Shown here: positions 19,834-50,343 of the stretch, piece by piece
Numbering within the stretch: position 1 is the stretch's first letter
How the letters are laid out: each line of letters begins with the position of its first letter
IMG/VR virus record: IMGVR_UViG_3300032307_000369
Coordinates: 181,551-245,550 of that record
Direction: 5' to 3' (one strand)
Length of the DNA: 64,000 bases
The notes under the pieces: model-generated
The model's database searches: none
The model's input: only the letters and a program-made list of their open reading frames with translations
Told to the model about the DNA's origin: nothing
Translations under genes and position numbers: made by a program

Positions 19834-22800
19834 ATGGCCGAATTTAAACTAGGTAGACTAAGATTCGTATGGAAAGGCACTTGGACTGCCACTACCGCAT
19901 ACGTAAAAGACGATATTGTTCGTCACGGTGGTAAAACATACGTTGCTAAAACAGCGCATACATCAGCATCAAACTTCTATACAGATTCAGATGCAAACAG
20001 ATGGGAACTAATGGCAGATGGTATTCAATGGATTAATACTCCTTGGACTGCTAGCACCACTTATAAAGAAGGTGACTTAGTTCGATATGGCGGAAAAGTT
20101 TATCTATGTATAGACGGTCATACTGCTAATGCTACACAGAACGGCGGCTTTTATACAGATTTAGGTATTAACAAATGGAGTCTATTTGTTGATGGTATCA
20201 CTGCTGTTGGTGATTGGACAGTTAGCACTTACTATAAGTTAGGTGACATTGCCAAATACAATGGTCTTACTTACATTTGTACAGAAGGACACACTTCTTC
20301 ATCTACAACTAGTAGTGGTTTAGAAGCAGACATTGGTAAATGGGATGTCTTTGCTGAAGGTATTAAATATCGAGGTGCTTGGTCAGGCACAACTCGTTAC
20401 ATTCTAAATGACGTAGTTAAATTTGGTGCTAGTTTATATATTTGCGCACTACCACACACAAGTACTAGTGTGTTTGAAGATAACAGATGGTTCTTATTCA
20501 CATCTGGATTTGAATTTGGCGGAGAGTGGACCAATTTAACAGAATATCAAATTGGTGACGTAGTTCGTTATGGTGGTTACTTGTACGTAGCCGTTTCTAG
20601 AAATACTGGACAAGTTCCAACTGGAACTTCTGGTAATTGGACATTGTTGTCCATGGCATATAGTACTAATGGTACTTACAGTAACGTTGCTACATATAAA
20701 CCAGGTGAAGTGGTAAGACACGGTGGTAATACATTCGTAGCCAATCAAGAAATTGGCGTAGGTGAAACACCAGTTAGTGATGTTGCCAAATGGGACTTGC
20801 TAGTTTCAGGTGTTCGTTGGACTGGTGATTGGACTGCGACTCCAACTGAAGTAACTTACAAGATTAATGATCTAGTAAAATATGTTGCTACAACATACGT
20901 TTGCGTAACAGAACATGATCCTACAAACTTAAATCGTCCTGACTTAGATGCACTTGGAACAAATTGGATTCCTTTTGCAGAAGGTGCAGACGTAAACGTT
21001 ATGGTTCGTAGAGGTGATTTAGTCACTCGTAATGCCATACAGAATATTAGATTACCAGTGGGTGATGCTGGACAAATTCTAAAGGTGCAGAATAACGGCC
21101 TTGATTTAACTTGGGGTAACGTTGGTAGTATCACTAACATTTATTATGTTAGTACTGAAGGTCTTGATGGCCCAACACGTGGAACATCTATTGACCAGCC
21201 ATTTAGAACAATCAAGTACGCTTGTGATTATGTAAGAACAGTTGCTCCTGCTGGATTTGATAGCCCAGCAGTTATTAATGTTAAGGCAGGTGTTTACACT
21301 GAAATCTTCCCAATAAGTTTACCAAAATTTACATCCTTGGTAGGTGATGAACTACGTATGAGTATTGTTCAACCAACACCTGAAACAAGTCACTTGGACA
21401 AGTTTAGAATGCGTGATAGTACAACTATCCGTAACTTTACATTCCGTGGGGCAACTGGTGCACCAGGCGGTGGATTTACAGATGTTAATCAGTATGGAAC
21501 AAGACGTCCAACTGGTGCGGCATGGTGCTGTTTAGATCCAGGTACTGGTCCTAATGATGAAAGCGTATGGGTAGGCGCACGTTCACCTTACATTCAAAAC
21601 GTAACAACATTTGGTGATAACTGCGTTGGTCAAAAAATTGACGGTGCATTACACAATGGTGGTAACAAGTCTATTACATCAAACGACTTTACACAAGTTA
21701 TGAGTGATAGTATTGGTGCTTGGTGTACTAACCAAGGTCGTGCAGAACTTGTTTCTGTGTTCACATACTATAGCTACATTGGTTATCTATGTGAAAACGG
21801 CGGTGTTATTCGTGCAACTAACGGTAACAACTCTTATGGTACATTTGGCTCGGTGTCTGAAGGCGTTGACCCAACTGAAATTTCTCGTACTGCCACTGTT
21901 GACAATAGAAGATTAAACGCAATTGTTGATGTTACACAAACAGATGGTGAAAGCGTTTTATACTTAGAATATTTAAATGCTGGTGAAAATTATACCTCAG
22001 CAACTTATGGATTTACTGGTTCAGGTGTAAGTGCAAGTCTTAGTGCGACTGCTGATATTGCCGCAGGCGGTGTAGCAGAAGTTCGAGTATTAGCTGACGG
22101 TGATAGTTATGTTGGCGTACAAAACAACGCACAGTTGGGTGATGCAACTTATATTAGACTAGGCGCATCAGATATCCAAATTACAAATGGATACAACGGA
22201 ATGCGTATCCTTTTAATTGACGGTACTGGTACTGGACAATATGCCTACATTAGTGCTTTTGATGGCGGTAGTAAAGATTTAACAGTCAATAAAGAAACAT
22301 TTACACCGTTAACTGTTACTGCGGTTGCTTCAACTGGTAATCTATTTACAACAGCAGACACTAGCACATTGACATTAAACATGCCAATTAATTTCCAAGG
22401 AACAGTACTTGGAAACGTTGTTGCAGATACAATTTATTATGTTAAAACTATTCCAGGTGGAACAACATTTACAGTCAGTGCTTCTATCAGTGGTGGTGTA
22501 GCTGGTACAACATTTAACCCAGGAACTGCTACTGGCACTATGGTTTTACATGCAGTTGGTTGGGACGTATTTGCTGACAATATTGTTACAAACATTGGCG
22601 GCGCAACTCAAGCTAACCCAGTAGTAATTACAACATCAACACCACACGGATTAAAGTCTACTTGGAACGCTAGAATTAGTGGCGTGACTGGTATGACACA
22701 GTTGAATGGTAACACATACTTTGTTGACGTGTTGTCAAATACAACATTTGCCCTATACACAGATTTTGGATTAACTTCGTCAGTTAACGGAACAGCATAT

Positions 22801-25800
22801 GGCGCATATTCTTCTGGTGGTGCAGTTAACGGAAAACAAAGCATTGCTCCATTCTTGAATACAACGACAAGATATGTAATTGAACCACGACCAGTTTTCT
22901 CAACAGGTTCAGGCGCAAGTGCAACTCCTGTTAGAACATTAGGTATTGATGCTTTTACTATTGTTAACGGCGGTAAAGGTTACACAGACGCACCTACACC
23001 AATCATTGCAGGCCCAGACACTGTATTAGACGCGGTTAATGCAACAGCGACAACTACTATTTCTGGACCAGTTGACACTGTAACTGTTTATTCTAGAGGT
23101 GGTGGCTATACTAGCGCACCTACTTTACAGTTTGTAGGTGGAGGCTTACCAACAGATTATGTTGATTTTGCGGCAGAAGCTGTTGTTACATTAGGTACTG
23201 CAATTTTTGTTCCTGGAACTTTAAGATTTTATGAAGTAACTGTTGCTGGAACACTTGGACTAACAGCGCCAACACACACTAGCGGAACTGCTACTAACGG
23301 AACTGCTACCGTAAGATACTTAGGTAGAAGAGCCAGTGCAACTGCTAACATGACCAATATTATTAAAACATTGGTATTGAATAGTGGCGGTGTTGGATAC
23401 ACTAGCACTCCTAGTGTGCAAGTAAGTGGGGCTAGTGGTTCAGGAGCAATTATTTCTGCAACCATCAGTCAGGTTATTAACCAAATTACACTTGATACAC
23501 CAGGTGCTGGATATAACACTGCTCCTACAGTCACTCTAATAGGCGGAGATCCGTTAGAGTTTGCAACAGCTCAAGCAGTACTAGATGCTACGTTAACTGG
23601 AGTTACTATCGTTGAAGGTGGTAACGGATATGTTCCTGCATCAACAACAGTTATTGTATCTGCTCCACCTGCTGGCGGTACAACTGCTACTGCTGAAGCA
23701 GTTATTGACTTTGGTGCATATATTCCAGGAATTACACCAGGAGCAGTTACCAGCATTAATATTCTTACTGCTGGTAGTGGTTATGCAACATCGCCTGCAA
23801 TAATTATTAATGGTGTTGGTAGCGGAGCTAGTGCTCAAACAATTATTACTGGTGAAATTGATAGAATTGAAGTGATCAACAGAGGTAGAGGATACGAATC
23901 TACTCCAGCAGTTAGTATTACTGGTGGCGGCGGATTTGGTGCAACAGCTACAGCTAGCAGAACAGGCTCAGTAAACACTATTACAATTATTGATGGTGGA
24001 GCTGGATTTACTGGCAATCCTACATTAGAATTTATTGGCGGTGGTCTACCCAACGGAAGTCCAAGTCATGCAACAGCCGTAGTTTCAGCAATTGACTCTG
24101 TAGTCTCAACTGTCACTCTTGTAGACGCTGGTGATAATTATACTTCAAACCCTGCAATTTCTGTAACAGGTGGTGGCGGAACAGGACCAACACTAAGAGC
24201 TAGAATTAATGGTCAGATTAGAACTATCACAGTAACTGATCCAGGTAGTGATTATAGTGCTGTAGTAGCACCAGTCATTGCGTTTAGTGGTGGTCGAGTG
24301 TACAAATCACCAGTTGCTGGTCTAAGATATTATACAAATGCCAGTGCATTAACCGCAATTGGTATTAGTCAGTTGACTCAAACACTTGCTGGTATTGCAA
24401 GAGCAACTGTTCTAGCTAAAAACGTTGTTGCTAACACAAACCCTGTGACCTCATATCAACAAGCAGTGACTCGTACTGCTGGCGGTGTAGGTTATACTCA
24501 GCCAACAAACATTGGTTTTGCAATTGACAGTTGGATGAACGGTGTATATTACACAATTGAAAACGGTCAAAATCATGTCAATGCCGCACAAGTGCTAAGA
24601 CTAAACAGACGTTTTTTAAGAACAGACGCAATGCAGTTCTTGGCAAACAACTATCCAGCTGTTTCAGATAGTACTTGGAGCAGAGATATTGGATTGATAA
24701 TTGATGCAATTGCAAAAGATATTGAAACACGCGGAGTAGTTAACTCTTCAACAGTTGCAATTAAACAGGCTTTCATAGATGCTAGAACTGCTGAACCTTT
24801 GGCAGTATTAGGCGTAATGGATTTCTTAAGAGATAGTATTGTTAGCATTGTTCAAAACATAGTATTAACTCCACAAGTTGATGGAACTACTACTTGGGAA
24901 GGACTATGGGTAGATGCTAAGAGCTATCAAACTAATGATGTGGTGTTCTTTGCAGGCAAGACTTATACTGCACAAAGCAATCATTTCTCTAACACATTGT
25001 TCAGTGTTGATTTGGCAGCTGGTCGCTGGGTTGAAAATATCAATGGTCAACAGACTTTAGATCTTCCATTAGAACCAGGCGCTATTACCGCTACTGAAAA
25101 TTTAGGAAATTACATTAAAGGGATATTACAATATCCACCAGCTAATGCATCTTGGACAGCGGCTGCAACATTGTTGTCAAGTAACCAATCTTATATCAAA
25201 GCAGAAGTAATTGCTTATATAAACAACACATATGAAGATTTTGTATACAATCAATCACTATGTGCTCGTGATATTGGATTTATTTTAGATGCTGTAGCAT
25301 ACGACTTATTAAATGCTCTAATTGCAGAAGCTACTGCTACTGCTAGCACAACTGGTGTTATATCAAAACTTACAGTTGATACTGGCGGTGAAGGATATAG
25401 TGGAGGGGTTGTAATTGCACTTGCAGGTGGTGGCGCTAGCGGAGCACCAACAGTTAATGCAACTGCAACTGCCATTAGAAATCAACTAACTGGTGCAATC
25501 ACTGGCTTTACAATGACTAATAAGGGTAAAGGATACGCTTCTTTACCAACTGTTACAATTACTCCTGATACAGGTAGTGGCGTAGTTGCTAGATGCCGAG
25601 TTGTTGGTGGTAACGTAAGTAAAGTGAATATTATTCATCCAGGTAGTGGCTATACTTCTGGACCGTTCCTAAGACTAGTTGATCCAAATAACAGTGGAGA
25701 TGCGGCATTCCAAGTGCGTGTTGCAAACGGCGTTCTAAAACAGCCTAAATTTACTGGTAGAGGAACAGGATTCTTAACTGCTGCCGTTGACATTAGTGGT

Positions 25801-28800
25801 GACGGATTTGCTGAAATTGCACAAACAGGTAGCTTTATATATGTTAAGAACTTAACAAATATTCCTACTCCAGGTGCAAACATACAGTTTGAAGATAATG
25901 ACACATTCTATAAACTAGTTACAGTTCGTGAAGTTATTGGACCACAAGGAACAATTAATGCTAGAGCAATTTTACTAGCTAACAAAGCGTTCGTACAGGC
26001 AGAAGTTATTAGCTATTTGAATAACTTCACATTTGACAGTGTAAAATGCTCACGAGATATTGGTTATATTATTGATGCTTTAGCTGATGATTCATTAACT
26101 GGATCTAATCAAAGACTATTAGCAGTAAGATGGCAGTATGCTAGAGGATTATATACTACATTTGACCGTCAAAGAATGCAAACTGCGTATGTATTAGAAT
26201 ACTTGCAGACAGAAATTAATCAATTATTCAACTATGCTGATAATGAAATATCTCAAACATTGAATGATTTGATTGAGTGGATTAAGAACGAAGAATATTA
26301 TAAAGATATTAAAGTTCCTTTAAATCCTCCTGCTGGATATGATGCAGAAAACGATGCTGGTTCTGCTGTACTAACTGCTAACCGAGAGTTTATTGCAGGA
26401 AATGCGCTAAGAAGATTTATCAACAATGCCCCTGCTGGCACATATACTTACAACTTAGAAATATGGTTGCAAGAATTTAGACAAGTAGTCGACAGTGTTG
26501 CATATGACTTAATGTACGCTGGAAATCAACAAGTGATCGAACACAGCTCAACTTTCTATAGTGGAGCAAACTTCATACTTGCTGGTTATACTGGTGACAC
26601 AAGTTTAGTAAAAGCAGAATTTGTAAACACGTTAACTTACATTAAGACATTGGCACAAGACATTGTACAGAATAATGTAATAGCTTCATTACAATCTGGA
26701 TATACAGTTAGCGGAACTGTTGCGGTGGTCAACGCATCAACAGGCGCTGTTACTGGTCCTGCACAAGACAGAACTCTAAGTGCTGGTGATACTGGTACCG
26801 CATTCCGTTCAGGCGGATTGTGTGATGACTTTATTTCAATTGTTAACAATAGTCCAACAACTATTGGCACAACTGTTACAGCTACCGGTACTTCCTTTGC
26901 AGGATTTGCTAGTGGCGATGTTGCTAAGAGAACAACGCTTCTAAATGCTAAACCAACATTGCGTACACAAGCAACAACTTGGATGACTGACAACTTTGTT
27001 GATTTTACGTATGATCAAGAAAAATGTTCTAGAGACGTTGGAATTATCGTTCAAGCAATTGCTGATGATATATATGGTGACGTAGCTAAATCTGTTGAAG
27101 CAGGTCAACGATATTATGCAGCCACTGCGGCTTTAGTGATTAGTGCGCAGAAGCCACAAACTATCGCAGCCATTAATTGGATTGGTGAAGTAGTACGCCG
27201 TGTTACAAATAACGTTACATGGGTAAGAACACAGAATCGTGTTTTCCAAGAACGATTCCCAAGTTTAACTGGCATGAGCGAAGCATTACCAGTACTACAA
27301 GAACGTGTAAACATTATTAAACGAATTGTTGAATATGGTGCATTCTTTGATCAAGTTAAACAAATTCTTTTAGATAACAAGTCTTATATTCAAGCTGAAG
27401 TAGTAAGTTTTGTTGACGCAACTTATGAAAACTTAAACTACAGTAGATCACTATGTTCTAGAGATGCAGGTTTAATTGTAGACGCATTGATATATGACGT
27501 ATATGGCGGATTGAGTAGAAGTCGTGAAGCTGGTCTACGTTATTATCAAAGCGCCAGTGCGTTGCTTGCCATTACTGGAGATCAATTGATTCCAACAACT
27601 ACTGCTATTAACTATCTAAGACAGTTAGCACAAGCAGTAATTTTAAATCAAAATCCTTCAGTTCAGTTCCAAGAAGCTGTTCTAAGAACAAGTATCAACA
27701 CAAACACTGGATCAATAGCGTTTGTAGCAGTTACTCCAGGATCTAATTATAGCCAAGGTACAAGTATCACAGTGAATACTGGTGGTAGTGGATCAATTGC
27801 TGGCGAAATTGATGCTGTGGTTGATGTTGCTACTGGTAGTATTATTGAAGCAACAGTTGTTAATGGTGGTTCAGGATTTAATAATGCACCAAGTTTAGCA
27901 ATAACAAAACCTGTTGCAGTGGTAAAAACTTATGCTAATATTTCAGGAACAACGTTGACTGTAAGTGACACTGTTGGAATATTTGTTGGCATGGAAGTTA
28001 CTGGTACAGGATTTACTAGCAATCAACGTGTAGTATCTATTAACAGTAATGGAATTGCAGTTGAACTTAGTGCAACGTCTGACGGTACTCCTGCAGGCAA
28101 TATCACATTCACTGATATTGGTAGTGGAGCAAGCGCAACCGCTATTTTAGGAGTTGCTTATAATACTGCACATGTATCAGAACTACTAGTTGATGAGAAG
28201 ATTGACGAAGCAACTGCGGCACTATTGGCAGTTATTGCTGGCGGTCCAAGTGTATTACCTGCTGGTAGATATGCGGCACGTCTACAAGTTAGTCCAGAGA
28301 TTCCAATTCAAATTAGTCCTCCACATGACACAAACACTGTGGTACGTAGTAAGTACTCACAAGTTCGTTTAACTGGTCACGACTTCTTGAATATTGGTAC
28401 TGGTAACAAGAACGATACCAACTACCCAGGCATTCCATTGAACGCTCCAGATCAAGCTAACGAAGTTGTTGAAGTTGGCGGTGGTCGTGTGTTCTACACC
28501 TCAACTGACCAAGACGGTAACTTTAGAGTTGGTGAACTATTCCGAGTTGAACAGTCAACTGGTATTGCTACATTGAATGCTGATGCGTTTAACTTGAGTG
28601 GTTTGAACGAACTATCACTTGGTGGTGTTACACTAGGCGGTTCAGGCGCTGTTATTCGTGAATTCTCAACAGACAGTACATTCTTTGCTAATAGTGACAA
28701 TATTGTTCCAACACAGAAAGCTATTAAGACTTACATTCAAAGTGCTTTAGGTTCTGGTGGTGGTAACATTGCTGTTAACGCGGTTATTGCTGGTGAGATT

Positions 28801-40003: not shown

Positions 40004-40005
40004 TT

Positions 40006-40404
40006 ATGCTACACGAAATCAATGACGGAGAATTCGCAACATATATTGTTGTTGAGAGGAAAGTTAAAGACGAATATACTGCAAGAAAAGTACAAAAAGA
40101 TAGACGTAAATTGCAAATATGGTTAGATGCATTATTAAGTGATCGCCATGTTATTATCTTCTATAAAGACGGTATTGAAGAAAAAATGTTTGTGGGTAGT
40201 AAAAAAGAAATGTTTGGTGAACTACCAACAACTCCTATGAATATTGACATTGTTAATAACAAAGTAAAATTACAAAGCTATTACTGCACTTGTTTTGAAG
40301 TTCCCAATAGAACTCCTGTTGCTGTACATGTTGATTCTGTGACTAAATTTATTGTTAAGCAAGAAGGATTATCAGAACTCAGTTCAAGGATTAGATTTAT
40401 ATGA
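40006..40404 (+). CDS. Hypothetical protein (weak resemblance to phage WYL/Sm-like proteins)
   Basis: IIFYKDG..KM ... HVDSV pattern only; the ORF is coupled to its neighbours. Confidence 0.4.
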   Translation: MLHEINDGEFATYIVVERKVKDEYTARKVQKDRRKLQIWLDALLSDRHVIIFYKDGIEEKMFVGSKKEMFGELPTTPMNIDIVNNKVKLQSYYCTCFEVPNRTPVAVHVDSVTKFIVKQEGLSELSSRIRFI

Positions 40405-42858: not shown

Positions 42859-43956
42859 TTAAATTCCTGTTGTATCCGCGTTGTAGAAAAAGTATCCAGT
42901 ACCATCACTTGTTGTGGCAATTCCTGGACCACTAAATGAAAATGTTATGAAGGCAGCTCCTACACCATTTCCGTATAATACTCTAACTGGATAGTATGTA
43001 CCAGCTGTCAATTGTATATTCCCACTTGTGACTGTACCAGTATTAAATGTGGCAAACACATTGGCATTGCCAGTAGTATAACCACTAACGGCATTGTTAC
43101 CAATCCAAAAATAACTGCCATCATCAGATGCTAGTCTAAAATTATAAATTCCAGTTGTTGGTGCTAGGAAGTAACCTACCCATTGGTAGCTGATGTTATC
43201 ACCAATTGACGGATAATTAACTGCGTTAGTTGCACCTTCTGCCGTAGGGGCGGTCATGTAATTCACGTTTTCGTTATGATAACCCAGTTGATATGATTGA
43301 TATAATCCTGCAATTGGATATATGGTTCCTCGTATTTGCATCCAATCAATTCTAAAATCGTCAACGGCTGTGGCTCCAAAATCAAATCTAATACCAGTAA
43401 TGGTATTATTGGTCCAGTCAGTGCCTCCAGCTGTTAAATTTCTATTATCAATGATCATGTATTGATAGTCAACCCCGTTCCATGTTGGTTGAGTGTAAAC
43501 GTTTCTAAATGAATTTGACTCACCATGACCACCAGTTGTGTAGTAGAATGTACCGTCCCATCCAGTGCCTCCAGTTCTAAGTAATGAAACTTCAACATAT
43601 GGATATCTACTGCCATCAAAACTCAAACCTGTTCTTCTAAGCTGGGGATCAACTGTTGTGGCATCTAAAGTTGAATATGTTGAACCAGATGCAGTCAAAG
43701 TAGCATTAGTGGTAGTAAAGGATTGATTAGTTGCGCCAAAATCAAAAACAATACCAGGACCAGCAGTTGTAACTCCTACTGGCACAATTGCATTGCTTTT
43801 TCCATAGCCATCAGCAGCCAATCGTATGGCTCCTGCACCAACTCCATATAGAGTTCTAACAGATGCTTGTCCTAAAGATATTTGTGTAGTGCCAGTAAGT
43901 CCTAGCTCTACGTTAATATCACTAAAGTCTATTTGTCCGTTTGCTGGTAATGGCAT
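42859..43956 (-). CDS. Fibre-tip adhesin with PA14/GLEYA-like domain
   Basis: N-terminal MPLP..G.I...DIN.ELG...YGKS cap; C-terminal WVGYFLAPTTG.YNF.LASDDGSY.WI...L.AG.YYPVR. Confidence 0.8.
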   Translation of the reverse strand: MPLPANGQIDFSDINVELGLTGTTQISLGQASVRTLYGVGAGAIRLAADGYGKSNAIVPVGVTTAGPGIVFDFGATNQSFTTTNATLTASGSTYSTLDATTVDPQLRRTGLSFDGSRYPYVEVSLLRTGGTGWDGTFYYTTGGHGESNSFRNVYTQPTWNGVDYQYMIIDNRNLTAGGTDWTNNTITGIRFDFGATAVDDFRIDWMQIRGTIYPIAGLYQSYQLGYHNENVNYMTAPTAEGATNAVNYPSIGDNISYQWVGYFLAPTTGIYNFRLASDDGSYFWIGNNAVSGYTTGNANVFATFNTGTVTSGNIQLTAGTYYPVRVLYGNGVGAAFITFSFSGPGIATTSDGTGYFFYNADTTGI

Positions 43957-43957: not shown

Positions 43958-46900
43958 TTAACCTAACTTCTTTTTAATTTCGTCAACTTGATCTGCTAGC
44001 TCATTAATTGCTTGAATAATCAAACCAGCCATTTTTTCATACTTGACCGCTTTATGTCCGTCTGGACGTGTGGCAACTACCTCTGGTAGTACTACTTCAA
44101 CATCTTGTGCAATCACACCAGTGTCATGTTTGCGCACAAAATAATCATCTTCGCCTCCACGACGTTCAACTTCTTCGTCAGTCCAATCAAACATAACACC
44201 AGTAATTTGTCTTAGTTTTCCCAATGCATTTTCAATTGGTTGAATATTTTCTTTTAGATTTCTGTCTGAAGAAAAGTATGCAGTGATTTCGTTTGTAGCA
44301 CGGATTTCACCAGTAGTAGAACTAGCCGCTGTGCCTACTCCAAGTGAACTATATTGTGGATAGGCAGAACCACTTAACGATGCAGTTGCACTTTCTGATA
44401 AACGCAATCTTACTCCATTGCAGAAATTAAATGTACCATCGTCGCCATTACGTACACACAACAATATCCATGTATGAGGTACTTCTAATGCCGATGTATA
44501 ACTAGCAACTCTAAAGTTTGCTGCCGTACTAGTAAAAGTACTTCCTGTTGGAAGAATATAATACAATGCTTCCCATGCGGCTAGTGGAACTCCTGCCGCA
44601 GTGGCTGTTTTATTTGCCGCTCCACCAACACCAGTTACAGTGCCACTGGTAGGACAGGTAATATCAAAATAACCAGCAGTGCTGAATGTTGCGCCAAAAC
44701 CGTTGGAAATAACAATAAATCTAGTAGCCCATAATACGCTTCCAGTAGAATTGACAGTGATTGCTCCTCCACCACTAACATTAAAGCCTGCTTTGATGCT
44801 TGCTGAATATGTGGCTTGCACAATGCCATTGTATTGAGTTGCAGTTGTAGCAGTTCCCGATAACGTTCCAACAGTCAGCGTGTTTGTATTTGGATTATAT
44901 GTAAATTCTGCCGCACTGTCTTGTAATAGACCATAGTTGCCAGTAGTTGATACAGTTGTATTAGCAAATGGAACTTTGAAAGCACTGTTAGTATTTGATG
45001 CTGTTAATGCAACGTTTGTTGCGTTGGTTGCAGTTGTGGCTGTAGAAGAAGTGACTCCAGTTAAGTTAGCACCATTTCCATAAAAAGCGTTGGCATATAT
45101 GTTACCAGTCACGCCCATACCACCAGTAACACGCAATGTGCCTGTGCTAGTACTTGTTGCCGCACTATTTTGCGTAAACGAAATTGTACCAGACGCAGTT
45201 AATGCGTTACCAAAATTTACTGCACCGCCTACACCTAACCCACCAGTGACTGTTAATGCACCAGTATTTGTACTAGAACTTGCAGTATTATTTGTAAAAT
45301 TAGTAATTCCTGAAACGTTACCACCAGCAAAAGTTTGCGCAATTACACCAGTTAAGTTTGCACCACTACCGTAAAACCCAGTAGCGTACACATCACCAGC
45401 AACTCCTAAGCCGCCGTCTACAATTAATGCTCCAGTACTTGTTGAACTGCTTGCATCAGTGTTTGTTATTTCAATAGCGCCAGCATGTGTTAGTTTACCA
45501 GTACTTGCCCATTGTGCTCTTATGTTTCCTTGTCCATCAGCAATAATAATATTATTGTCGGATGTGGCAATACTTGTGCCGTCATACATACCTAGAATCA
45601 AGTTGTTACTACCAGTAGTAATTGCACTACCTGAGCCACTTCCAACTGTGGTATTCTGAATACCAGTCACATTTAATAAACTATTGTAACCTATACTTGT
45701 GTTGTGATCACCAGTCGCACCAACTGATTGTGAAAATGTACCAACCGCAACGTTAGTTGACCCTTCATTAGCTTTAAGAACATCAGTACCAATAGCAACG
45801 TTTGAACCACCACCTGTTTTAGCACCCATGGCATTATAGCCAATAGACACGTTATTGTTAGTAGTAGTAAGCTGACCTTGGTTACTATAACCAATTGCAA
45901 TATTATTTTGTCCACCAATGTTTGAACCTAATGGAGCATTTACTCCTGATCCACCACCAATGGCCACGTTGGTATCATAGTTTTGACCGCCAGCACCAAA
46001 AGCAATACCGCCAGATTTAAATGTTCCGCCAACGTTCAAGTTACCTTGAACACCCATACCACCAACAACACGTATGGCACCAGTGGTTGTACTAGTACTA
46101 GGAGTCACGTTGTTAACAACCAATGTTCCAGTAATTGTACCACCATTATAACTACCGCTAGCACTGGTCAATACTGGACTGCCAGCCACATAAATTGTGC
46201 CGCCAAAATATCCATCGCCACCTACACCAATACCACCGCCAACAATTAAGGCACCAGTTGTCGTACTAGTACTGGCTGTTACCGCTTGAATTTGAATAGC
46301 GTTTGGAACTGCACCACCCGCAAATTGACTACTAGCCGCATCAACGTATGCTTTGTTAACAGCATCTGTACTTTCAGTTGGACTGGCTACGTTAACAATT
46401 TTACTGCCACTAACGTTAACCTCGCCAGGAGCATCAATAATAAAATCACTACCGCTGGTAAATTTAAGTGCGCCGGTGGTGTCATCAAATAGTGTTTTAA
46501 CTTTTAACTTACCACTAACTATTAGATCATTGCCTACAGTGATGTCATTATAAACGGCTAGGTTATTACCAACTGTTGCATTAGACACTGTAGAAAACAA
46601 TCCAGTAACTTGTGCATTTGTAGCAGTTAATTTGTTAGTTGCTGGGTCCCATGTTAAATCAGATGACGTGTCATCAACTACTGTTCCACTAGCAGTATAA
46701 TAGGCTAATCTATTAACAACACCAGAACTTACTGTTCCACTAGCACTTAAATCTAAACTACCAATTTCTGTGTCAACATAAGTTTTAACTGCTTTTTCGG
46801 TTGGTACTGCCGCATCACTATTACCTGCTAGTGTTCCGTCAATACTAAATTCACTAACTGTCGCACCTTGTGCAAATCCTAAACTGGTAATTGTAATACT

Positions 46901-47311
46901 GGCATTTAAACTGCCAGTAACTGTTAGGTTTTGTGCTGTAAGTGTTCCTGTTGCATCATTCCAAGTTAATGCGGCACTAGTTCCTGATGTAATACCTTGA
47001 GCATTATAGTAAGCAACACGTCCAGGACTTCCTGTACCTAATGGCAAGTTAGTCAGTTGACTACCATCACCAACAAAACTTTGCGCGGTGATTGTTCCGC
47101 TAGCATTTACGGTTCCTGTGTTTATTCCAGGAGTAGTGACCGACCCTGCAGATAAAGGACCAGTAATAGTAGCACTGGTAGAAGTAATTGATGAAAAAGT
47201 AGGACTGTTATTTGGTCTTAAATCCCAAGTGGTGCCATTCCATTCCCAGGTTGTTGTACCAGAAGTATATGTTTGATTTAGTGTTGGACTTAGTGGAAAA
47301 TTAACTGGCAT
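43958..47311 (-). CDS. Tail/neck fibre with S74 intramolecular chaperone
   Basis: S.STTTGAL.V.GG.GV repeats, N.A.G repeats and DAVNKAYVD; C-terminal SSDRNLKENI...GVIAQDV...V.YEK. Confidence 0.85.
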   Translation of the reverse strand: MPVNFPLSPTLNQTYTSGTTTWEWNGTTWDLRPNNSPTFSSITSTSATITGPLSAGSVTTPGINTGTVNASGTITAQSFVGDGSQLTNLPLGTGSPGRVAYYNAQGITSGTSAALTWNDATGTLTAQNLTVTGSLNASITITSLGFAQGATVSEFSIDGTLAGNSDAAVPTEKAVKTYVDTEIGSLDLSASGTVSSGVVNRLAYYTASGTVVDDTSSDLTWDPATNKLTATNAQVTGLFSTVSNATVGNNLAVYNDITVGNDLIVSGKLKVKTLFDDTTGALKFTSGSDFIIDAPGEVNVSGSKIVNVASPTESTDAVNKAYVDAASSQFAGGAVPNAIQIQAVTASTSTTTGALIVGGGIGVGGDGYFGGTIYVAGSPVLTSASGSYNGGTITGTLVVNNVTPSTSTTTGAIRVVGGMGVQGNLNVGGTFKSGGIAFGAGGQNYDTNVAIGGGSGVNAPLGSNIGGQNNIAIGYSNQGQLTTTNNNVSIGYNAMGAKTGGGSNVAIGTDVLKANEGSTNVAVGTFSQSVGATGDHNTSIGYNSLLNVTGIQNTTVGSGSGSAITTGSNNLILGMYDGTSIATSDNNIIIADGQGNIRAQWASTGKLTHAGAIEITNTDASSSTSTGALIVDGGLGVAGDVYATGFYGSGANLTGVIAQTFAGGNVSGITNFTNNTASSSTNTGALTVTGGLGVGGAVNFGNALTASGTISFTQNSAATSTSTGTLRVTGGMGVTGNIYANAFYGNGANLTGVTSSTATTATNATNVALTASNTNSAFKVPFANTTVSTTGNYGLLQDSAAEFTYNPNTNTLTVGTLSGTATTATQYNGIVQATYSASIKAGFNVSGGGAITVNSTGSVLWATRFIVISNGFGATFSTAGYFDITCPTSGTVTGVGGAANKTATAAGVPLAAWEALYYILPTGSTFTSTAANFRVASYTSALEVPHTWILLCVRNGDDGTFNFCNGVRLRLSESATASLSGSAYPQYSSLGVGTAASSTTGEIRATNEITAYFSSDRNLKENIQPIENALGKLRQITGVMFDWTDEEVERRGGEDDYFVRKHDTGVIAQDVEVVLPEVVATRPDGHKAVKYEKMAGLIIQAINELADQVDEIKKKLG

Positions 47312-47312
47312 C

Positions 47313-47582
47313 TTATTCTCCTAAATCCGCAACATTTACCACATGCACTCTATTTTCTAAACAGCAGTTATATCCGCCGTTAATTGAATGTTGTGACTCG
47401 TCCCATAACATTTGAAAGAAATCTTCTCTTTCAAATATTCTAGTCAATTGATCCATTTTAATTGCTGTATTGGTTACAGTATTAAACAAGGTTAAATCGT
47501 ATAAGGAATTAATAGTGCCATCAGCAGACTGTCGTGTGCCGTTCTCAGTTATTGTATATTTCCATGTTCCTAATATTTGCAT
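47313..47582 (-). CDS. Hypothetical small protein in the fibre operon
   Basis: 89 aa; fills the gap exactly, with 1-nt spacing to both neighbours. Confidence 0.6.
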   Translation of the reverse strand: MQILGTWKYTITENGTRQSADGTINSLYDLTLFNTVTNTAIKMDQLTRIFEREDFFQMLWDESQHSINGGYNCCLENRVHVVNVADLGE

Positions 47583-47583
47583 T

Positions 47584-50343
47584 TTAATATCCTACCACGA
47601 AAGAGTTATTACCAGCACCACCAATTCCCATTATTGAATAATGTTTTGTTGTTTGTGGTAAAATTGTAAATGTTTGGCTAGTTGTTGGAGTCATTGTTGC
47701 ATTAGTTCCGCCCTGTAAAGTTAGCGTGGTATTTGAACCTGACACACTTGCTGTTACATACAGTTTGGTTTCTACACCAGGGATAACATTCGTTAATGTT
47801 ATAGTTGCTGATGTACTAGATAGATTAAAATGGAACGCCCTAGCTGTTCTACAATCAATAGTAGTAGTACCACTAGTGTCAATTTCGTTAGCAGGCTCAA
47901 TATAAATGTTTCCAACCATTGCTGGGTGCAACGTACAAATATACTGATAACGTCCTACAGTGTCTCTAGGAATTTGCCAATATAAAGTACCACTTATTTT
48001 TGCTTGAGCTGAAGCACCTGTTGATACAGTGCCATCTCTTGTAATATGCACTAGACCTAAATTGTAATTTGAACCTGCTTGATCAAGAATTGCAAATGGA
48101 TGTGTCCCTTGCATTGTGTTCAAATTAAATGCAATAGTCTGACCAGCTTTAAAATATAAAGTTGGATTATCAGTTGTACCTGTAAAATTAGTAAATGTGT
48201 AGGATAATAAACTATTGTTTACTACATCTAATGATGTACTCGCTGACAATACAATTCTATCCATGGTGAATGTTGGATAATTTTTCCAACCAGTACCGTC
48301 ATAGTATAGTACTTGACCCAAACTTAAATTATTACCTACACCGCCAATTGTTACGTCGCTTAGTTCGTCTAAAGTGGTTGCACCCGTTGTGCCAGTCAAC
48401 GTTATAGTATCAGTAGTTGCATTTGTAGTAATAGTAATACCGCCTGCACCAACTAAGGTCAATGTATCAGTGGTTCCATCAGCTACTACACTAGTCTGTC
48501 CAGCAACTGCGATTGTTTCAAAACTATTACTTGCGGCACCACCTGCACCAGCATTGTCAGTTCCTGGTACCCATTGTGCTAGCGCACCGTTGTATTTTAA
48601 TACTTGTCCATCAGTTGGCGTCACTGATATTTGTACATCAGACAAATCATCTAATGTTGTAGGTACTGTAGGTATTGTTGGACCAGTAAAGGTAATAGTG
48701 TCAGTGGTTGCATTTGTGGTGATAGTGATACCACCTGCACCAACAAATGTTAAATTATCTGCTGGTATGTCAGCAGTGACTGTGGGTTGTGCTTGTACAA
48801 TAATGTTAGCAAACGTATTTTGTTGTGTAATAGTTTGCGTATTATTAATGGTTATAGTATCAGTGGCAGCATCTGTTATTAGAGAAATGTTGGTTCCTGC
48901 AACTAATGTCAATGTATCTGCACTAGAATCTGCAATTACGTTAGGCTGACCACTTACTGCAATAGTACTAAATGAAGTAGCAACTCCTGAGCCAGACAAA
49001 CTTGCACTAATACTGATTGTATTTGCATCAACTCTAGTTAGACTAACGTTAGCACCTTCTTCAAACAAAACGTTTTGGGTTGTATTGTCACTACCAGCTA
49101 GCCTTACGTTAACACCGCCAGCGGCTGGTTGTGTATTAAAAGTATATGTTGTTTGAGCAGGCACGGTCGCCGCAATAGTGATAGTGTCAGCAGTTGAATT
49201 TGAAGTTAATGATATGTTGCTACCAGCAACTAATGTCAAAGTATCTGTTGGACTATCTGCAACAACGCTTGCTTGTCCTGCAATTGATATTGTTCTAAAA
49301 CTATCGCTAGCTGAACTTCCGCTTAAATCAGGAGCATTAACCCATTGTGTCCCGTCATATTTTAAAACTTCACCATTTGTTGGTCCAGACACTGCGACAT
49401 CTGACAAACTAATTAATCTTGGATTCACAAACTGTATATTAGAACCCATATTGCGATGGTTGTAGCACCAGTAGTATAATGTTGTTGGAAAATTATTTCC
49501 AACAGTTAATTCCACAGTTCTAGTAGTAGCTCCATTAAAAGCAGTGCCATTGTACACTTGACTAGTTACGACTACACCGTCTAATTTGTAGACCACATTG
49601 GTCACAAAGGCTGTACCACCATCACGTTCGCCGTTTAATTGATCTGCGCTAAAATTTAAATTGTGTGGGTTTGGAGTTGTGCCATTAGCATTGGGAAAAT
49701 ATACGTTTGTGTCATCGCTTTGATCAAACACATAGGTATAGCCTCGTTGTAAAATCAGTGGTGACGGCTTGTACTCGCCATTAATTCTATACTTGTTGCC
49801 AATATCAGGAGCTTGAGGAGGTACTATGGTAACAACAAAGGTTACTTTTGGTGTTAAGGTAGTATCAACGGCACTACTGCCTTGTAAATCAGCACTGTTA
49901 GTCCAAAAAGCACCATTCCACTTTAATACTTGTCCAACTGACGGACTGCCTACCACGCTAACATCAGTAAGCTGTGTTAGTGCTGTTGCTCCTCCACCGC
50001 CACCTGCGCCACCCCCTGCTTGCCCAAACTGTGGCATTGCAGGTTGTACCCATTGATTGCTGTCACCGTCATCTACATAGACATACAAAACGCCAGTATT
50101 AGTATTAAACCACAAACTGCCGCTACGACTGTTTGATGGTGGAACTTGTGCTACTGCTACCCCAAGACCGCTTTTAGCGTTAGTCAAATCTGCACGTAAA
50201 AGTGGAATTCCGCCCTTAATTAAGCCGTCATAAAGCACCAATGTTTTTTGATCTGCATCGTAGTACAGATCCCCATTGTTGAATCTACTGTCTAAAAAAT
50301 CGCTGTCGTTTGGGACTAGTCTAATTGAACGTAGCGGCGTCAT
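47584..50343 (-). CDS. Repetitive fibre protein with two cupredoxin-like domains
   Basis: Four F.TI.V.GQ..V.AD...D.LT.V repeats and four L.DV......G.VL...G..W repeats; YYWCYNHRNMG and YQYICTLHPAMVG. Confidence 0.75.
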   Translation of the reverse strand: MTPLRSIRLVPNDSDFLDSRFNNGDLYYDADQKTLVLYDGLIKGGIPLLRADLTNAKSGLGVAVAQVPPSNSRSGSLWFNTNTGVLYVYVDDGDSNQWVQPAMPQFGQAGGGAGGGGGATALTQLTDVSVVGSPSVGQVLKWNGAFWTNSADLQGSSAVDTTLTPKVTFVVTIVPPQAPDIGNKYRINGEYKPSPLILQRGYTYVFDQSDDTNVYFPNANGTTPNPHNLNFSADQLNGERDGGTAFVTNVVYKLDGVVVTSQVYNGTAFNGATTRTVELTVGNNFPTTLYYWCYNHRNMGSNIQFVNPRLISLSDVAVSGPTNGEVLKYDGTQWVNAPDLSGSSASDSFRTISIAGQASVVADSPTDTLTLVAGSNISLTSNSTADTITIAATVPAQTTYTFNTQPAAGGVNVRLAGSDNTTQNVLFEEGANVSLTRVDANTISISASLSGSGVATSFSTIAVSGQPNVIADSSADTLTLVAGTNISLITDAATDTITINNTQTITQQNTFANIIVQAQPTVTADIPADNLTFVGAGGITITTNATTDTITFTGPTIPTVPTTLDDLSDVQISVTPTDGQVLKYNGALAQWVPGTDNAGAGGAASNSFETIAVAGQTSVVADGTTDTLTLVGAGGITITTNATTDTITLTGTTGATTLDELSDVTIGGVGNNLSLGQVLYYDGTGWKNYPTFTMDRIVLSASTSLDVVNNSLLSYTFTNFTGTTDNPTLYFKAGQTIAFNLNTMQGTHPFAILDQAGSNYNLGLVHITRDGTVSTGASAQAKISGTLYWQIPRDTVGRYQYICTLHPAMVGNIYIEPANEIDTSGTTTIDCRTARAFHFNLSSTSATITLTNVIPGVETKLYVTASVSGSNTTLTLQGGTNATMTPTTSQTFTILPQTTKHYSIMGIGGAGNNSFVVGY

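What the first reader, a model, noticed from the sequence alone, without database searches (positions are those of the whole stretch)
19834..50343. Synthesis: a possible cofactor-decorated, chemically tailored virion surface
Within 30 kb, the fibre genes carry candidate bilin-type Cys sites and blue-copper sites, and they flank a halogenation/hydroxylation/methylation cassette. Inference only: together these may form an undescribed system in which appendages are post-translationally modified and loaded with cofactors to sense the environment or host. The parts could equally be independent.
Basis: inference. Interest (0 to 1): 0.6.

Follow-up and report, generated by a model that had tools for sequence, protein, structure and literature searches.

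The report
Pigment- and copper-type domains in cyanophage fibres
The tail-fibre genes of this large marine cyanophage contain domains that look like light-harvesting pigment proteins and blue-copper proteins with their cofactor-binding residues intact. This could explain why some cyanophages attach to cells only in the light; the neighbouring halogenase/oxygenase gene set looks like a separate unit.

Summary
The window is the structural-gene block of a cyanomyovirus contig of at least 245 kb.

- **Pigment-type domains.** Fibre gene fibA (19834-29979) carries about seven helical units. Four have an invariant Cys-x-Arg-Asp motif. A folded unit matches phycobiliproteins first in two structure searches. 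A profile comparison puts the Cys on the bilin-attachment Cys-84 (P = 1.3e-5, controls clean).
- **Copper-type domains.** fibC and a subtilase carry three cupredoxin domains (pLDDT 88; all top fold hits are cupredoxins). They keep the full His/Cys/His/Met type-1 copper set. The same domain ends the "gp9" baseplate protein of T4-like cyanophages.
- **Enzyme cassette.** A U32-like/methyltransferase fusion, a Trp-type halogenase, two 2OG oxygenases, a DUF6065 protein and a small ORF are real and syntenic with fibre genes in about 29 related contigs.

The one-system reading is only partly supported. The cassette has its own conserved sigma70-type promoter and an upstream hairpin. The three parts vary independently across 19 phage genomes.

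A different link emerged. The bilin-lyase gene cpeT occurs only in genomes with the pigment-like units (13 of 13; P = 0.004). In four genera it lies just upstream of such a fibre gene.

Cofactor binding itself is inferred, not shown.

The parts
19788..19795 (+). T4-late-type promoter box TATAAATA, 39 nt before the fibA ATG
   Evidence: It is the only +-strand copy in the 64 kb window. The window has 2 copies in all against 6.1 expected by chance.
19834..29979 (+). fibA, a 3381-aa mosaic tail-fibre protein
   Evidence: PHROG tail-fibre families match (phrog_9851, E 1e-191). Pfam finds four CBM_5_12 modules at the N-terminus and a Peptidase_S74 chaperone at the C-terminus.
20011..20943 (+). Four CBM5/12 carbohydrate-binding modules, each with a Cys-x3-His that is not a bilin site
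   Evidence: PF02839 scores 110.9 bits over 4 stretches. C92, C149, C204 and C357 sit at the module's own conserved position.
24292..27678 (+). About seven phycobiliprotein-like helical units of fibA (aa 1487-2615). Four keep the Cys-x-Arg-Asp triad, with Cys codons at 25261, 26047, 27025 and 27454.
   Evidence: A profile built from alignment A6 finds 7 units. The AlphaFold2 model of unit 27268-27681 has pLDDT 82. The 50 best Foldseek PDB rows shown are all phycobiliproteins or engineered derivatives. VIA-align ranks bilin-binding globin domains first, Z 10-11. The profile search and hhalign put the Cys on Cys-84.
29704..29862 (+). S74 intramolecular chaperone domain at the fibA C-terminus
   Evidence: PF13884, E 5.3e-11.
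29987..34021 (+). Glycine-rich fibre-associated proteins gly1 and gly2, and p350. p350 is a paralogue of the gly2 C-terminal half.
   Evidence: PF12810 (E 2.4e-13), PF21722 (E 3.1e-19) and phrog_1417 match. All are syntenic in the relatives.
34061..35447 (+). p291 (phrog_1409) and p180, conserved genes of unknown function that end the fibre gene run
   Evidence: They are conserved in order in about 29 contigs. p291 homologues occur in P-SSM4 and P-RSM1.
35455..35504 (+). Sigma70-type promoter (TTTACA, 17 nt, TATAAT with an upstream TG) overlapping a hairpin and T-run, directly before the MT563 ATG
   Evidence: It is the best promoter match in 20 kb, 11 of 12 positions. The -35 and -10 boxes and the hairpin are conserved in relatives. 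Of 11 predicted pairs, 6 show compensatory changes.
35505..37196 (+). MT563, a fusion of a peptidase-U32-like domain with conserved Cys clusters and a class I SAM methyltransferase
   Evidence: PF13578 (E 1.7e-8) and phrog_1458 (E 3.5e-171) match. The ESM Atlas places aa 1-360 with Peptidase U32 clusters, score 0.92. Invariant Cys include C203, C207, C237, C329, C333, C336 and C339. Homologues at 42-46% identity occur in 123 cyanophage and 3 Ralstonia phage records.
37154..38704 (+). Hal, a flavin-dependent Trp-type halogenase. The likely true start is the ATG at 37193.
   Evidence: PF04820, E 3.4e-90. PDB matches: PyrH E 1.2e-64, VirX1 E 1.9e-54. The GxGxxG motif, the catalytic Lys (FKFG) and the Glu (FVEPLE) align. 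The WxWxIP motif reads W-R-F-T-I-P.
38691..39269 (+). ox192, a 2OG-Fe(II) oxygenase of the TIGR02466 / Oxy_5 type
   Evidence: PF13759, 62.9 bits; TIGR02466, 66.8 bits.
39266..40404 (+). p245 (DUF6065, the 'Syn9 gp43' family) and p132 (no family)
   Evidence: Atlas feature score 0.97 and structural TM 0.72 to DUF6065 clusters. p245 is 35-36% identical to the genes that follow the halogenases in Syn9 and S-RIM44.
40401..40985 (+). ox194, a prolyl-4-hydroxylase-type 2OG-Fe(II) oxygenase
   Evidence: PF13640, 46.8 bits; phrog_61, E 1.3e-47. It is 37% identical to the P-RSM1 oxygenase inside that phage's fibre module. It is partly homologous to the oxygenase between cpeT and the fibre gene in S-PM2.
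40982..42856 (-). S8, a subtilisin-like protease with a C-terminal cupredoxin domain (40985-41314; H565/C610/H613/M616)
   Evidence: PF00082, E 3.1e-32. The Asp/His/Ser motifs are present. The C-terminus aligns with the fibC cupredoxin domain.
42859..43956 (-). PA14/GLEYA lectin-domain protein
   Evidence: PF10528 (E 2.3e-23) and PF07691 (E 9.2e-17).
43958..47582 (-). fibB (1117-aa fibre with an S74 chaperone) and the small ORF p89
   Evidence: PF13884, E 2.8e-15, plus many tail-fibre PHROGs.
47584..50343 (-). fibC, a gp9-like baseplate/fibre connector with two cupredoxin domains: d1 at 49423-49776 and d2 at 47893-48261
   Evidence: phrog_677, E 2.5e-62. aa 564-815 are 33% identical to P-SSM4 gp9 (E 6e-18). 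The d2 model has pLDDT 88, and all top PDB fold hits are cupredoxins (E about 1e-5, probability 1.0). PF00127 gives a weak hit at the copper loop.

Best explanation
The region is the late fibre and baseplate module of a large T4-like cyanophage. Its host-recognition proteins are mosaics that include two cofactor-type domains taken from photosynthetic protein families.

**Shown**
- fibA holds about seven phycobiliprotein-fold units. Four retain the Cys-84 / Arg-86 / Asp-87 bilin-attachment constellation.
- fibC and a subtilase hold three cupredoxin domains with complete type-1 copper ligand sets.
- Both domain types are widespread in cyanomyovirus fibre and baseplate proteins. In the 50,697-record phage collection they were found only in cyanophage records, plus one unnamed marine virus record each.

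**Inferred**
- The pigment-like units are loaded with a bilin made in the infected cell. This genome encodes a heme oxygenase and a bilin reductase.
- Loading is either autocatalytic or done by a CpeT-type lyase. Relatives encode that lyase directly upstream of such fibre genes.
- The loaded units act as a light-responsive element of the fibre. This would account for the light-dependent adsorption of S-PM2 and P-HM2.
- The cupredoxin domains bind copper, for stability or as a redox-responsive element.

**The cassette.** The gene run MT563-Hal-ox192-p245-p132-ox194 is a separately transcribed accessory unit sitting in the variable slot after the fibre genes. Its substrate is unknown. It is not shown to act on the virion and is not co-inherited with the two domains.
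For: **Cupredoxin**
- Three paralogous domains are present.
- The ligands are conserved in 32 homologues at 15-43% identity, and the only Met replacement is Gln.
- The AlphaFold2 model has pLDDT 88. All top Foldseek hits are cupredoxins (AcoP, rusticyanin, amicyanin, plastocyanin), E about 1e-5.
- The same domain with the same ligands ends the gp9 of P-SSM4 and ACG-2014a. It matches 270 phage records, 269 of them named cyanophages.

**PBP-like units**
- The Cys is present in 97 of 97 motif instances.
- The model has pLDDT 82 and six helices.
- The 50 best Foldseek PDB rows shown are all phycobiliproteins or engineered derivatives, TM 0.47-0.68.
- The structure-only aligner ranks photocobilin, far-red allophycocyanin, the ApcE bilin domain and phycoerythrin first, Z 10-11.1.
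- In the profile search against PDB sequences, 4 of the top 5 are phycobiliproteins, with the Cys on Cys-84 and collinear helix B and E motifs.
- PF00502 is the commonest weak Pfam hit among the units, 3 of 67, best E 0.0035.
- hhalign against 22 cyanobacterial alpha and beta chains gives probability 80.5, P = 1.3e-5, score 38.8. Controls score 19 (reversed), 8-15 (30 column shuffles) and at most 19 (unrelated alignments).
- The units match 100 phage records, all cyanophage apart from one unnamed marine virus record.

**Bilin supply and lyase**
- ho1 and a bilin reductase lie on the same contig.
- Across 19 phage genomes, CpeT is present only where the units are present: 13 both, 2 units only, 0 CpeT only, 4 neither. 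Hypergeometric P = 0.0039.
- cpeT lies just upstream of a unit-bearing fibre gene in S-PM2, S-RIM44, ACG-2014j and S-H9-1.

**Phenotype link**
- P-HM2 (4 units) and S-PM2 (9 units) adsorb only in the light.
- P-SSM2 and P-SSP7 (no units) adsorb in the dark (PMC6628666).

**Separate cassette**
- Promoter and hairpin evidence.
- Independent distribution.
Against: - No cofactor is shown. Everything rests on sequence and predicted structure.
- The window's own units do not reach the Pfam PF00502 threshold.
- The Foldseek E-values for the pigment-like unit are only 0.02-0.16.
- VIA Z of about 11 lies inside the range that helical bundles can reach by common arrangement (note).
- The Atlas shape search put a globin-like RsbR-type sensor first, not phycobiliproteins.
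- No cpeT was found on this contig, which is estimated 70% complete.
- T-type lyases are known to serve Cys-153/155, not Cys-84 (PMC10452541).
- P-SSM7 and phage B3 have units but no detectable CpeT.
- The adsorption correlation rests on four phages.
- The CpeT association is not corrected for phylogeny.
- PF00127 scores only 13 bits against a cut-off of 21.2.
- The cassette's tight synteny with fibre genes across about 29 contigs and two other genera leaves open a role on fibre proteins.
Confidence: 0.55

Rival explanations
1. The folds are exapted and carry no cofactor. The phycobiliprotein-like units and cupredoxin domains are only structural spacers or adhesin modules of the fibres. The conserved Cys, Arg, Asp and His/Cys/His/Met residues serve folding, cross-linking or host binding. 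The cassette is an ordinary accessory-gene island.
For: - Phage fibres routinely recruit unrelated folds. Here those include CBM5/12, PA14/GLEYA, glycine-rich domains and a subtilase.
- Three of the seven fibA units and some units in relatives have lost the Cys motif.
- A giant ORF elsewhere on the contig has a cupredoxin-like domain with no ligands.
- The Pfam thresholds are not reached.
- No lyase is found on this contig.
Against: - The residues kept are exactly the cofactor-contact sets of both families. They are kept at 15-45% overall identity: Cys in 97 of 97 instances, and Cys and His in 32 of 32.
- The only Met substitute is Gln, the natural alternative axial ligand of stellacyanin.
- The domains were found in the phage collection only in cyanophage records plus one unnamed marine virus record each. 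Cyanophage hosts supply bilins.
- cpeT co-occurs with the units and is syntenic with unit-bearing fibre genes.
Confidence: 0.28
2. The halogenase, oxygenases and methyltransferase modify the fibre proteins, and these modifications work together with bilin and copper loading as one virion-decoration pathway.
For: - The order fibre, gly-rich, p291, p180, MT563, Hal, ox192, p245, p132, cupredoxin protein, S8, cupredoxin protein is kept in about 29 contigs whose halogenases are only 56-66% identical.
- The order fibre, halogenases, DUF6065, 2OG oxygenases recurs in Syn9 and S-RIM44.
- MT563 plus an ox194-like gene follow the fibre genes in many isolates.
- A 2OG oxygenase sits between cpeT and the unit-bearing fibre gene in S-PM2, S-RIM44 and S-H9-1.
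- VirX1 has a large, open active site and no known natural substrate (PMC8407142).
Against: - The components are distributed independently. HTVC008M has the halogenase plus an oxygenase without either domain.
- In S-B64 and S-H35 the halogenase lies beside a recombination nuclease.
- The cassette has its own conserved sigma70-type promoter, behind a hairpin with a T-run.
- No substrate evidence of any kind exists.
- Conserved gene order within one phage lineage is expected anyway.
Confidence: 0.12
3. The cassette is a small-molecule or nucleic-acid pathway expressed early. The U32-like domain would hydroxylate and the fused methyltransferase would methylate. The halogenase and oxygenases would act on a metabolite of the infected cell. 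The pathway would be unrelated to the virion.
For: - The promoter is of the sigma70 type and the genes are translationally coupled, with overlapping start and stop codons.
- U32-family enzymes such as UbiU/V, TrhP and RlhA hydroxylate quinones and RNA. This is from my own knowledge; the U32 assignment itself is only a lead.
- VirX1 halogenates diverse small aromatics in vitro.
- 2OG oxygenases and halogenases are listed among cyanophage accessory genes (PMC2984593).
Against: - The U32 assignment fails the Pfam test.
- No carrier protein, precursor peptide or further pathway genes are seen.
- The position beside fibre genes is constant.
Confidence: 0.3

Closest known systems
Phycobiliproteins (Pfam PF00502), including the autocatalytic ApcE bilin domain and the bilin domain of photocobilins
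   Same: - The fold is globin-like, and these proteins are the top structural matches.
- Helix B and helix E motifs are collinear.
- The invariant Cys falls on Cys-84 and the following Arg-Asp on Arg-86 / Asp-87.
   Different: - The units are about 120-aa tandem repeats inside fibre proteins of 3000-7000 aa, not 160-180-aa alpha/beta subunits.
- They score below the Pfam threshold.
- They have an extra invariant Asp and a G-G-N motif.
- There is no evidence of the alpha/beta interface, of trimer assembly or of a bound chromophore.
Cupredoxins (plastocyanin, amicyanin, rusticyanin, AcoP), and the cyanophage petE accessory gene
   Same: - The fold is a Greek-key beta sandwich.
- The ligand set is His ... 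Cys-x2-His-x2-Met, with Met replaced by Gln in a few homologues.
- One domain has a plastocyanin-like P-H-N motif.
   Different: - The domains are fused to the C-terminus of baseplate or fibre proteins and of a subtilase, so they would lie outside any electron-transport chain.
- PF00127 scores below its threshold.
- No redox partner is evident.
Kyanoviridae 'gp9 baseplate wedge tail fiber connector' (phrog_677)
   Same: - fibC aa 564-815 are 33% identical to P-SSM4 gp9.
- The C-terminal domain and its four ligands are the same.
   Different: - fibC is more than twice as long and carries a second cupredoxin domain.
- In relatives the two domains lie on separate proteins on either side of the subtilase.
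- The name comes from T4 gp9. My searches found no description of a copper-type domain in it.
VirX1 (cyanophage Syn10) and bacterial Trp halogenases PyrH, PrnA and RebH
   Same: - The family is the same (E 1e-54 to 1e-64).
- The FAD motif and the catalytic Lys and Glu are kept.
- As for VirX1, the natural substrate is unknown.
   Different: - Hal is only 28-33% identical to the halogenases of cyanophage isolates.
- The WxWxIP motif reads W-R-F-T-I-P.
- Hal sits in a fixed cassette with a U32/methyltransferase fusion and a DUF6065 protein.
Phage CpeT (T-type phycobiliprotein lyase homologue), so far read as an accessory gene acting on host phycoerythrin
   Same: It is found only in cyanomyoviruses (PMC10452541). 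Here it co-occurs with the pigment-like fibre units and is syntenic with unit-bearing fibre genes.
   Different: - It is not on this contig.
- T-type lyases are known for Cys-153/155, not Cys-84.
- A virion protein as its substrate is my inference.

Membership tests
Type-1 (blue) copper cupredoxin | Greek-key beta-sandwich cupredoxin fold | tested here: met
   The AlphaFold2 model of fibC d2 has pLDDT 88. All top Foldseek PDB hits are cupredoxins, E about 1e-5, probability 1.0, TM 0.4-0.6.
Type-1 (blue) copper cupredoxin | Ligand set: an N-terminal His plus Cys-Xn-His-Xn-Met (or Gln) in the C-terminal loop | tested here: met
   The set is present in all three window domains. Cys and the second His are invariant in 32 homologues. 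The first His is kept in 31 of 32. The axial position is Met in 29 and Gln in 3.
Type-1 (blue) copper cupredoxin | Score above the Pfam Copper-bind (PF00127) gathering threshold | tested here: not met
   13 bits against 21.2, E 0.02. The match covers only the C-terminal loop of fibC d2.
Type-1 (blue) copper cupredoxin | Bound copper with absorbance near 600 nm and the matching EPR signature | not testable with these tools
   This needs protein or virions.
Phycobiliprotein (PF00502) | Globin-like phycobiliprotein fold | tested here: met
   The 50 best Foldseek PDB rows shown are phycobiliproteins or engineered derivatives (TM 0.47-0.68, E 0.02-0.16). VIA-align puts bilin-binding domains first at Z 10-11. 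Caveats: Z is within the helical-bundle background, and the Atlas search put a globin-like sensor first.
Phycobiliprotein (PF00502) | Bilin-attachment Cys-84 followed by Arg-86 and Asp-87 in helix E | tested here: met
   C-x-R-D is present in 4 of the 7 fibA units. The Cys is present in 97 of 97 motif instances elsewhere. The profile search and hhalign place it on Cys-84.
Phycobiliprotein (PF00502) | Significant sequence-profile similarity to the family | tested here: inconclusive
   PF00502 gives no hit on this genome and weak hits for 3 of 67 units. The profile against PDB gives E 0.15-1.2, but 4 of the top 5 are PBPs. Targeted hhalign gives P = 1.3e-5 and probability 80.5, with clean controls.
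Phycobiliprotein (PF00502) | Covalently bound bilin, and a lyase or autocatalytic attachment | not testable with these tools
   Indirect evidence only: ho1 and a bilin reductase are on the contig, cpeT is absent here, and cpeT co-occurs and is syntenic in relatives.
Phycobiliprotein (PF00502) | Alpha/beta heterodimer and ring assembly | not tested
   The units are tandem repeats within one chain. No assembly prediction was run.
Flavin-dependent (Trp-type) halogenase | Pfam PF04820 above threshold, GxGxxG motif, catalytic Lys and Glu | tested here: met
   303.5 bits against a cut-off of 21. G-G-G-T-S-G lies at aa 25. The Lys in F-K-F-G and the Glu in F-V-E-P-L-E align with PyrH.
Flavin-dependent (Trp-type) halogenase | WxWxIP motif | tested here: inconclusive
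   The motif reads W-R-F-T-I-P, so the second Trp is replaced by Phe.
2OG-Fe(II) oxygenases | Pfam family above threshold and the His-x-Asp/Glu ... His iron triad | tested here: inconclusive
   Both proteins pass Pfam (62.9 and 46.8 bits against 27). ox194 has H118-x-E120 and H171/H173. ox192 has no H-x-D/E, only an H-A-H string. The triads were not mapped on a structure.
Peptidase U32 family (N-terminal half of MT563) | Match to PF01136 | tested here: not met
   There is no hit at E up to 10. The only support is language-model similarity to U32 clusters (0.92) and a 2005 note calling the P-SSM4 homologue similar to an archaeal protease.

The most novel reading that the evidence does not exclude
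Cyanomyovirus virions carry their own biliprotein photoreceptor. The phycobiliprotein-like units in the giant fibre and baseplate proteins would be chromophorylated in the infected cell, with the phage genes ho1, pebS/pcyA and cpeT serving virion maturation rather than host light harvesting. The holo-fibre would then gate adsorption by light. This would explain the light-dependent adsorption of S-PM2 and P-HM1/2, and why phages of phycobilisome-less Prochlorococcus carry bilin genes. The copper domains on gp9-type proteins would add a second, redox- or metal-dependent checkpoint.
Probability: 0.25. Interest if true: 0.95.

Novelty: new variant of a known kind. Interest (0 to 1): 0.8.

Why it matters
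**Two long-standing puzzles become testable.**
- Adsorption of several cyanomyoviruses needs light but not host photosynthesis. [quoted passage not shown]
- It is unclear why phages of Prochlorococcus, which lacks standard phycobilisomes, carry bilin-synthesis genes (PMC2984593).

A bilin-binding fold in the fibres, tied by synteny and co-occurrence to the phage lyase gene cpeT, gives a concrete candidate for both. It suggests simple experiments.

**Possible consequences if cofactors are present.**
- The complete type-1 copper site on the near-universal cyanophage "gp9" would be the first metal-redox fold I know of on a phage baseplate.
- Some "auxiliary metabolic genes" would be virion-maturation genes.
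- Diel infection models would gain a molecular basis.

**If the domains are apo.** The result is still a clear case of phage fibres recruiting two host photosynthesis folds.

Tried and rejected
**Searches that gave nothing**
- No DNA-level relative exists in the phage collection.
- Single-sequence searches of the fibA shaft and of fibC against PDB gave only noise.
- Profiles of MT563 and p245 against PDB gave nothing useful.
- A Pfam scan of 22 MT563 homologues found only the methyltransferase.
- NCBIfam added only TIGR02466 for ox192 and weak subtilase names.
- A self-BLAST of fibA did not detect the repeats, which are too divergent.
- A single-protein search for fibA unit relatives found only near-identical contigs. 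The alignment-based search was needed.
- PF00502 and PF01136 gave no match on the genome.

**Rejected readings**
- The Cys-x3-His sites in the N-terminal repeats are CBM5/12 positions, not bilin sites.
- A precursor-peptide (RiPP-like) reading of p89 or p132 has nothing to support it. p132 is conserved but has no family and no repeats of modifiable residues.
- The generic terminator scan did not list the hairpin before MT563. It was found by eye and confirmed by covariation.

**Weak or contrary results**
- The Atlas shape search did not return phycobiliproteins.

**Literature**
- Searches found no description of cupredoxin or phycobiliprotein-like domains in phage fibres. The library lacks most subscription journals.
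- The Gasper et al. 2017 paper on phage CpeT was not held.

**Not used**
- Reads tools, the search for homologous proteins, the search of protein representatives and complex prediction were not used.
- No other genetic code was needed.

Full report
**What the window is.**
- The window is bases 181551-245550 of a 245,550-bp IMG/VR virus contig, estimated 70% complete. GC content is about 39%.
- It encodes portal, major head, sheath, tube and baseplate-wedge-like proteins.
- Its proteins find relatives almost only in T4-like cyanophages, the Kyanoviridae.
- The contig also encodes a heme oxygenase and a ferredoxin-dependent bilin reductase.
- The finding's span, 19834-50343, has three blocks:
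  - a +-strand gene run: fibA, gly1, gly2, p350, p291, p180;
  - a +-strand enzyme cassette: MT563, Hal, ox192, p245, p132, ox194;
  - a convergent --strand run: fibC, p89, fibB, a PA14/GLEYA protein and an S8 subtilase.

**Blue-copper sites.**
- fibC and the subtilase carry three paralogous domains of about 120 aa. Each ends in Y-x-C-x2-H-x2-M-x-G and has an upstream His in a G-H-P-F or P-H-N context.
- A profile built from them found 34 distinct domains in related contigs. In the 32 aligned in A4, Cys and the second His are invariant. The first His is kept in 31 of 32. Met is replaced only by Gln, in three, at 15-43% overall identity.
- A model of fibC d2 has pLDDT 88. It matches only cupredoxins at the top of the PDB search: AcoP, rusticyanin, amicyanin, plastocyanin, nitrite reductase and laccase (E about 1e-5, probability 1.0).
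- Pfam's Copper-bind model reaches only 13 bits, on the copper loop.
- The same domain, with the same four residues, forms the C-terminus of the cyanophage "gp9 baseplate wedge tail fiber connector". It matches 270 records, 269 of them named cyanophages and one an unnamed marine virus record.
- In a 19-genome panel the domain is present in 14.
- I found no paper describing it.

**Bilin-type Cys sites.**
- fibA has two kinds of Cys site. Those in the N-terminal repeats are CBM5/12 positions.
- The other four (C1810, C2072, C2398, C2541) share the motif K/L-C-x-R-D-x-G-x-I-x-D-A. They lie in repeat units of about 120 aa.
- A profile finds seven such units in fibA and two in another giant ORF of the contig.
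- A search with a pattern that excluded the Cys returned more than 514 matching stretches in viral contigs. In the 80 kept, the Cys was present in 97 of 97 motif instances.
- In the phage collection the unit occurs in 100 records, 99 of them named cyanophages and one an unnamed marine virus record. The proteins are annotated as tail, short-tail-fibre, baseplate or structural proteins.

**Fold and homology of the unit.**
- A model built from 67 units (pLDDT 82, six helices) was searched three ways:
  - Foldseek against PDB: the 50 best rows shown were phycobiliproteins or engineered derivatives, TM 0.47-0.68, but E only 0.02-0.16.
  - The structure-only VIA search of 48,161 chains put these first, at Z 10.0-11.1: the photocobilin bilin domain, a far-red allophycocyanin, a phycobilisome subunit, the ApcE bilin domain and phycoerythrin. 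Generic globin sensors followed at Z about 8. The tool warns that such Z values are within reach of helical bundles.
  - The Atlas shape search gave a globin-like RsbR-type sensor first and no phycobiliprotein rows.
- At sequence level, the unit profile against all PDB sequences gave phycobiliproteins as 4 of the top 5. These are weak (E 0.15-1.2), but they align the Cys to Cys-84, the R-D to Arg-86 / Asp-87, and the preceding helix B motifs collinearly.
- PF00502 is the commonest weak Pfam hit among the units.
- A targeted hhalign against 22 cyanobacterial alpha and beta chains gave probability 80.5, P = 1.3e-5, score 38.8. Those chains were fetched with a degenerate pattern around the attachment site. 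Controls scored 19 for the reversed alignment, 8-15 for 30 column shuffles, and at most 19 for four unrelated alignments.
- I take the units to be diverged phycobiliprotein-fold domains that kept the chromophore-attachment triad (confidence about 0.75). That they bind bilin is an inference.

**A link that was not in the finding.**
- Across 19 complete phage genomes, the bilin-lyase homologue CpeT (PF06206) was found only where the units are present: 13 with both, 2 with units only (P-SSM7, B3), none with CpeT only, 4 with neither (P-SSM2, S-SM2, P-SSP7, HTVC008M). Hypergeometric P = 0.0039, uncorrected for phylogeny.
- In S-PM2, S-RIM44 and S-H9-1 the order is cpeT, 2OG-Fe(II) oxygenase, giant unit-bearing "short tail fiber protein". 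In ACG-2014j, cpeT ends 302 nt before such a gene.
- That oxygenase is a partial homologue of ox194.
- The two phages reported not to adsorb in the dark have 4 units (P-HM2) and 9 units (S-PM2). The two that do adsorb in the dark (P-SSM2, P-SSP7) have none (PMC6628666). Four phages are an anecdote, but the direction is right.
- This contig has no cpeT.

**The cassette.**
- Hal is a bona fide flavin-dependent halogenase: PF04820 at 303 bits, PyrH at 1.2e-64, VirX1 at 1.9e-54. The FAD motif and the catalytic Lys and Glu are kept. WxWxIP reads W-R-F-T-I-P.
- VirX1's natural substrate is unknown and its active site is unusually open (PMC8407142).
- ox192 and ox194 pass their Pfam thresholds. Their iron triads were not verified.
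- MT563 joins a methyltransferase to an N-terminal half with invariant Cys clusters. A language-model search places that half with peptidase U32, but Pfam does not.
- p245 is a DUF6065 protein of the Syn9 gp43 family.
- The cassette genes overlap or abut.

**Are the parts one system?**

Evidence for:
- In about 29 of 35 contigs found through Hal, at 56-66% identity, the order is kept from the fibre C-terminus through the cassette to a cupredoxin protein, the subtilase and a second cupredoxin protein.
- Syn9 and S-RIM44 have the order fibre, fibre-assembly-like genes, two halogenases, DUF6065, several 2OG oxygenases.
- MT563 homologues follow fibre genes in P-SSM4 and P-RSM1. The gene occurs in 123 cyanophage and 3 Ralstonia phage records.

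Evidence against:
- The three components vary independently. P-SSM2 has 4 cupredoxin matches and no units. S-PM2 has 9 units and no cupredoxin matches. HTVC008M has the halogenase and an oxygenase but neither domain.
- Hal lies beside a nuclease or the terminase in other phages.
- The window's only +-strand T4-late box lies 39 nt before fibA. Between p180 and MT563 lies the best sigma70-type promoter of the region, overlapping a hairpin and T-run. Both are conserved in relatives, with compensatory changes in 6 of 11 pairs.
- I therefore read the cassette as a separate transcription unit whose substrate is unknown.

**Verdict.**
Cofactor-type domains on the virion are real and conserved, but an integrated modification-plus-cofactor system is not supported.
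- A narrower system (bilin, a CpeT lyase, perhaps an oxygenase, and the fibre) is a new, testable hypothesis.
- Nothing here shows a bound cofactor or a modified residue.

Noticed in passing
window 35455-35504: A sigma70-type promoter overlaps a hairpin and T-run that ends one base before the MT563 ATG. Both elements are conserved in relatives with compensatory stem changes. This could be a terminator/promoter junction or a 5' regulatory hairpin.
   Followed up: partly
G000:C1:77144-85714 (L048) and G000:C1:151723-165966 (L049), outside the window: Two further giant ORFs lie on the contig. The 2857-aa ORF has two phycobiliprotein-like units with the Cys motif. The 4748-aa ORF has a cupredoxin-like domain that lacks all copper ligands.
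   Followed up: partly
G000:C1:37243-38446, outside the window: An adjacent heme oxygenase and ferredoxin-dependent bilin reductase are present, so the phage can make a bilin. No CpeT homologue was found on the contig.
   Followed up: yes
L018:14377-14883, L019:14380-14880, L036:10883-11389: Three related contigs have Gln instead of Met at the axial copper-ligand position (C-H-F-H-T-N-Q). This is the natural alternative seen in stellacyanin-type sites.
   Followed up: no
window 35505-37196 (MT563): Invariant cysteines include C203, C207 and C237, plus a C-x3-C-x2-C-x2-C cluster at aa 329-339. They suggest an Fe-S or zinc site in the U32-like half. The N-terminal half alone also occurs in Ralstonia jumbo phage RP31.
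   Followed up: partly
L046 (Syn9 36-43 kb) and L047 (S-RIM44 107-112 kb): Genes annotated 'DNA endonuclease V', 'ferrochelatase' and 'minor coat protein' are interleaved with 2OG oxygenases. ox194 matches the PHROGs that carry the first two names, so those two labels are probably mis-annotated oxygenase-like proteins.
   Followed up: partly
window 40982-50343 versus L004-L037: In relatives the cupredoxin proteins and the subtilase lie on the same strand as the cassette, and the two cupredoxin domains are on separate proteins. In the window and in L003 the block is inverted, the two domains are fused in fibC, and the subtilase has gained its own cupredoxin domain.
   Followed up: partly
window 30001-32000: GC content rises to 0.51 against about 0.39 elsewhere. 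The rise coincides with the glycine-rich genes gly1 and gly2 (23-27% Gly), so it is compositional rather than a sign of foreign origin.
   Followed up: partly
L256 (S-PM2 NC_006820.1 165928-177267): The RefSeq record lists 16 tRNA features inside the coordinates of the 3779-aa 'short tail fiber protein' CDS, all under one locus tag. This looks like a coordinate or annotation error in that record.
   Followed up: no
L003: The closest distinct relative, about 90% identical, has the same cassette but lacks p245 (DUF6065). That gene is therefore dispensable within the lineage.
   Followed up: no
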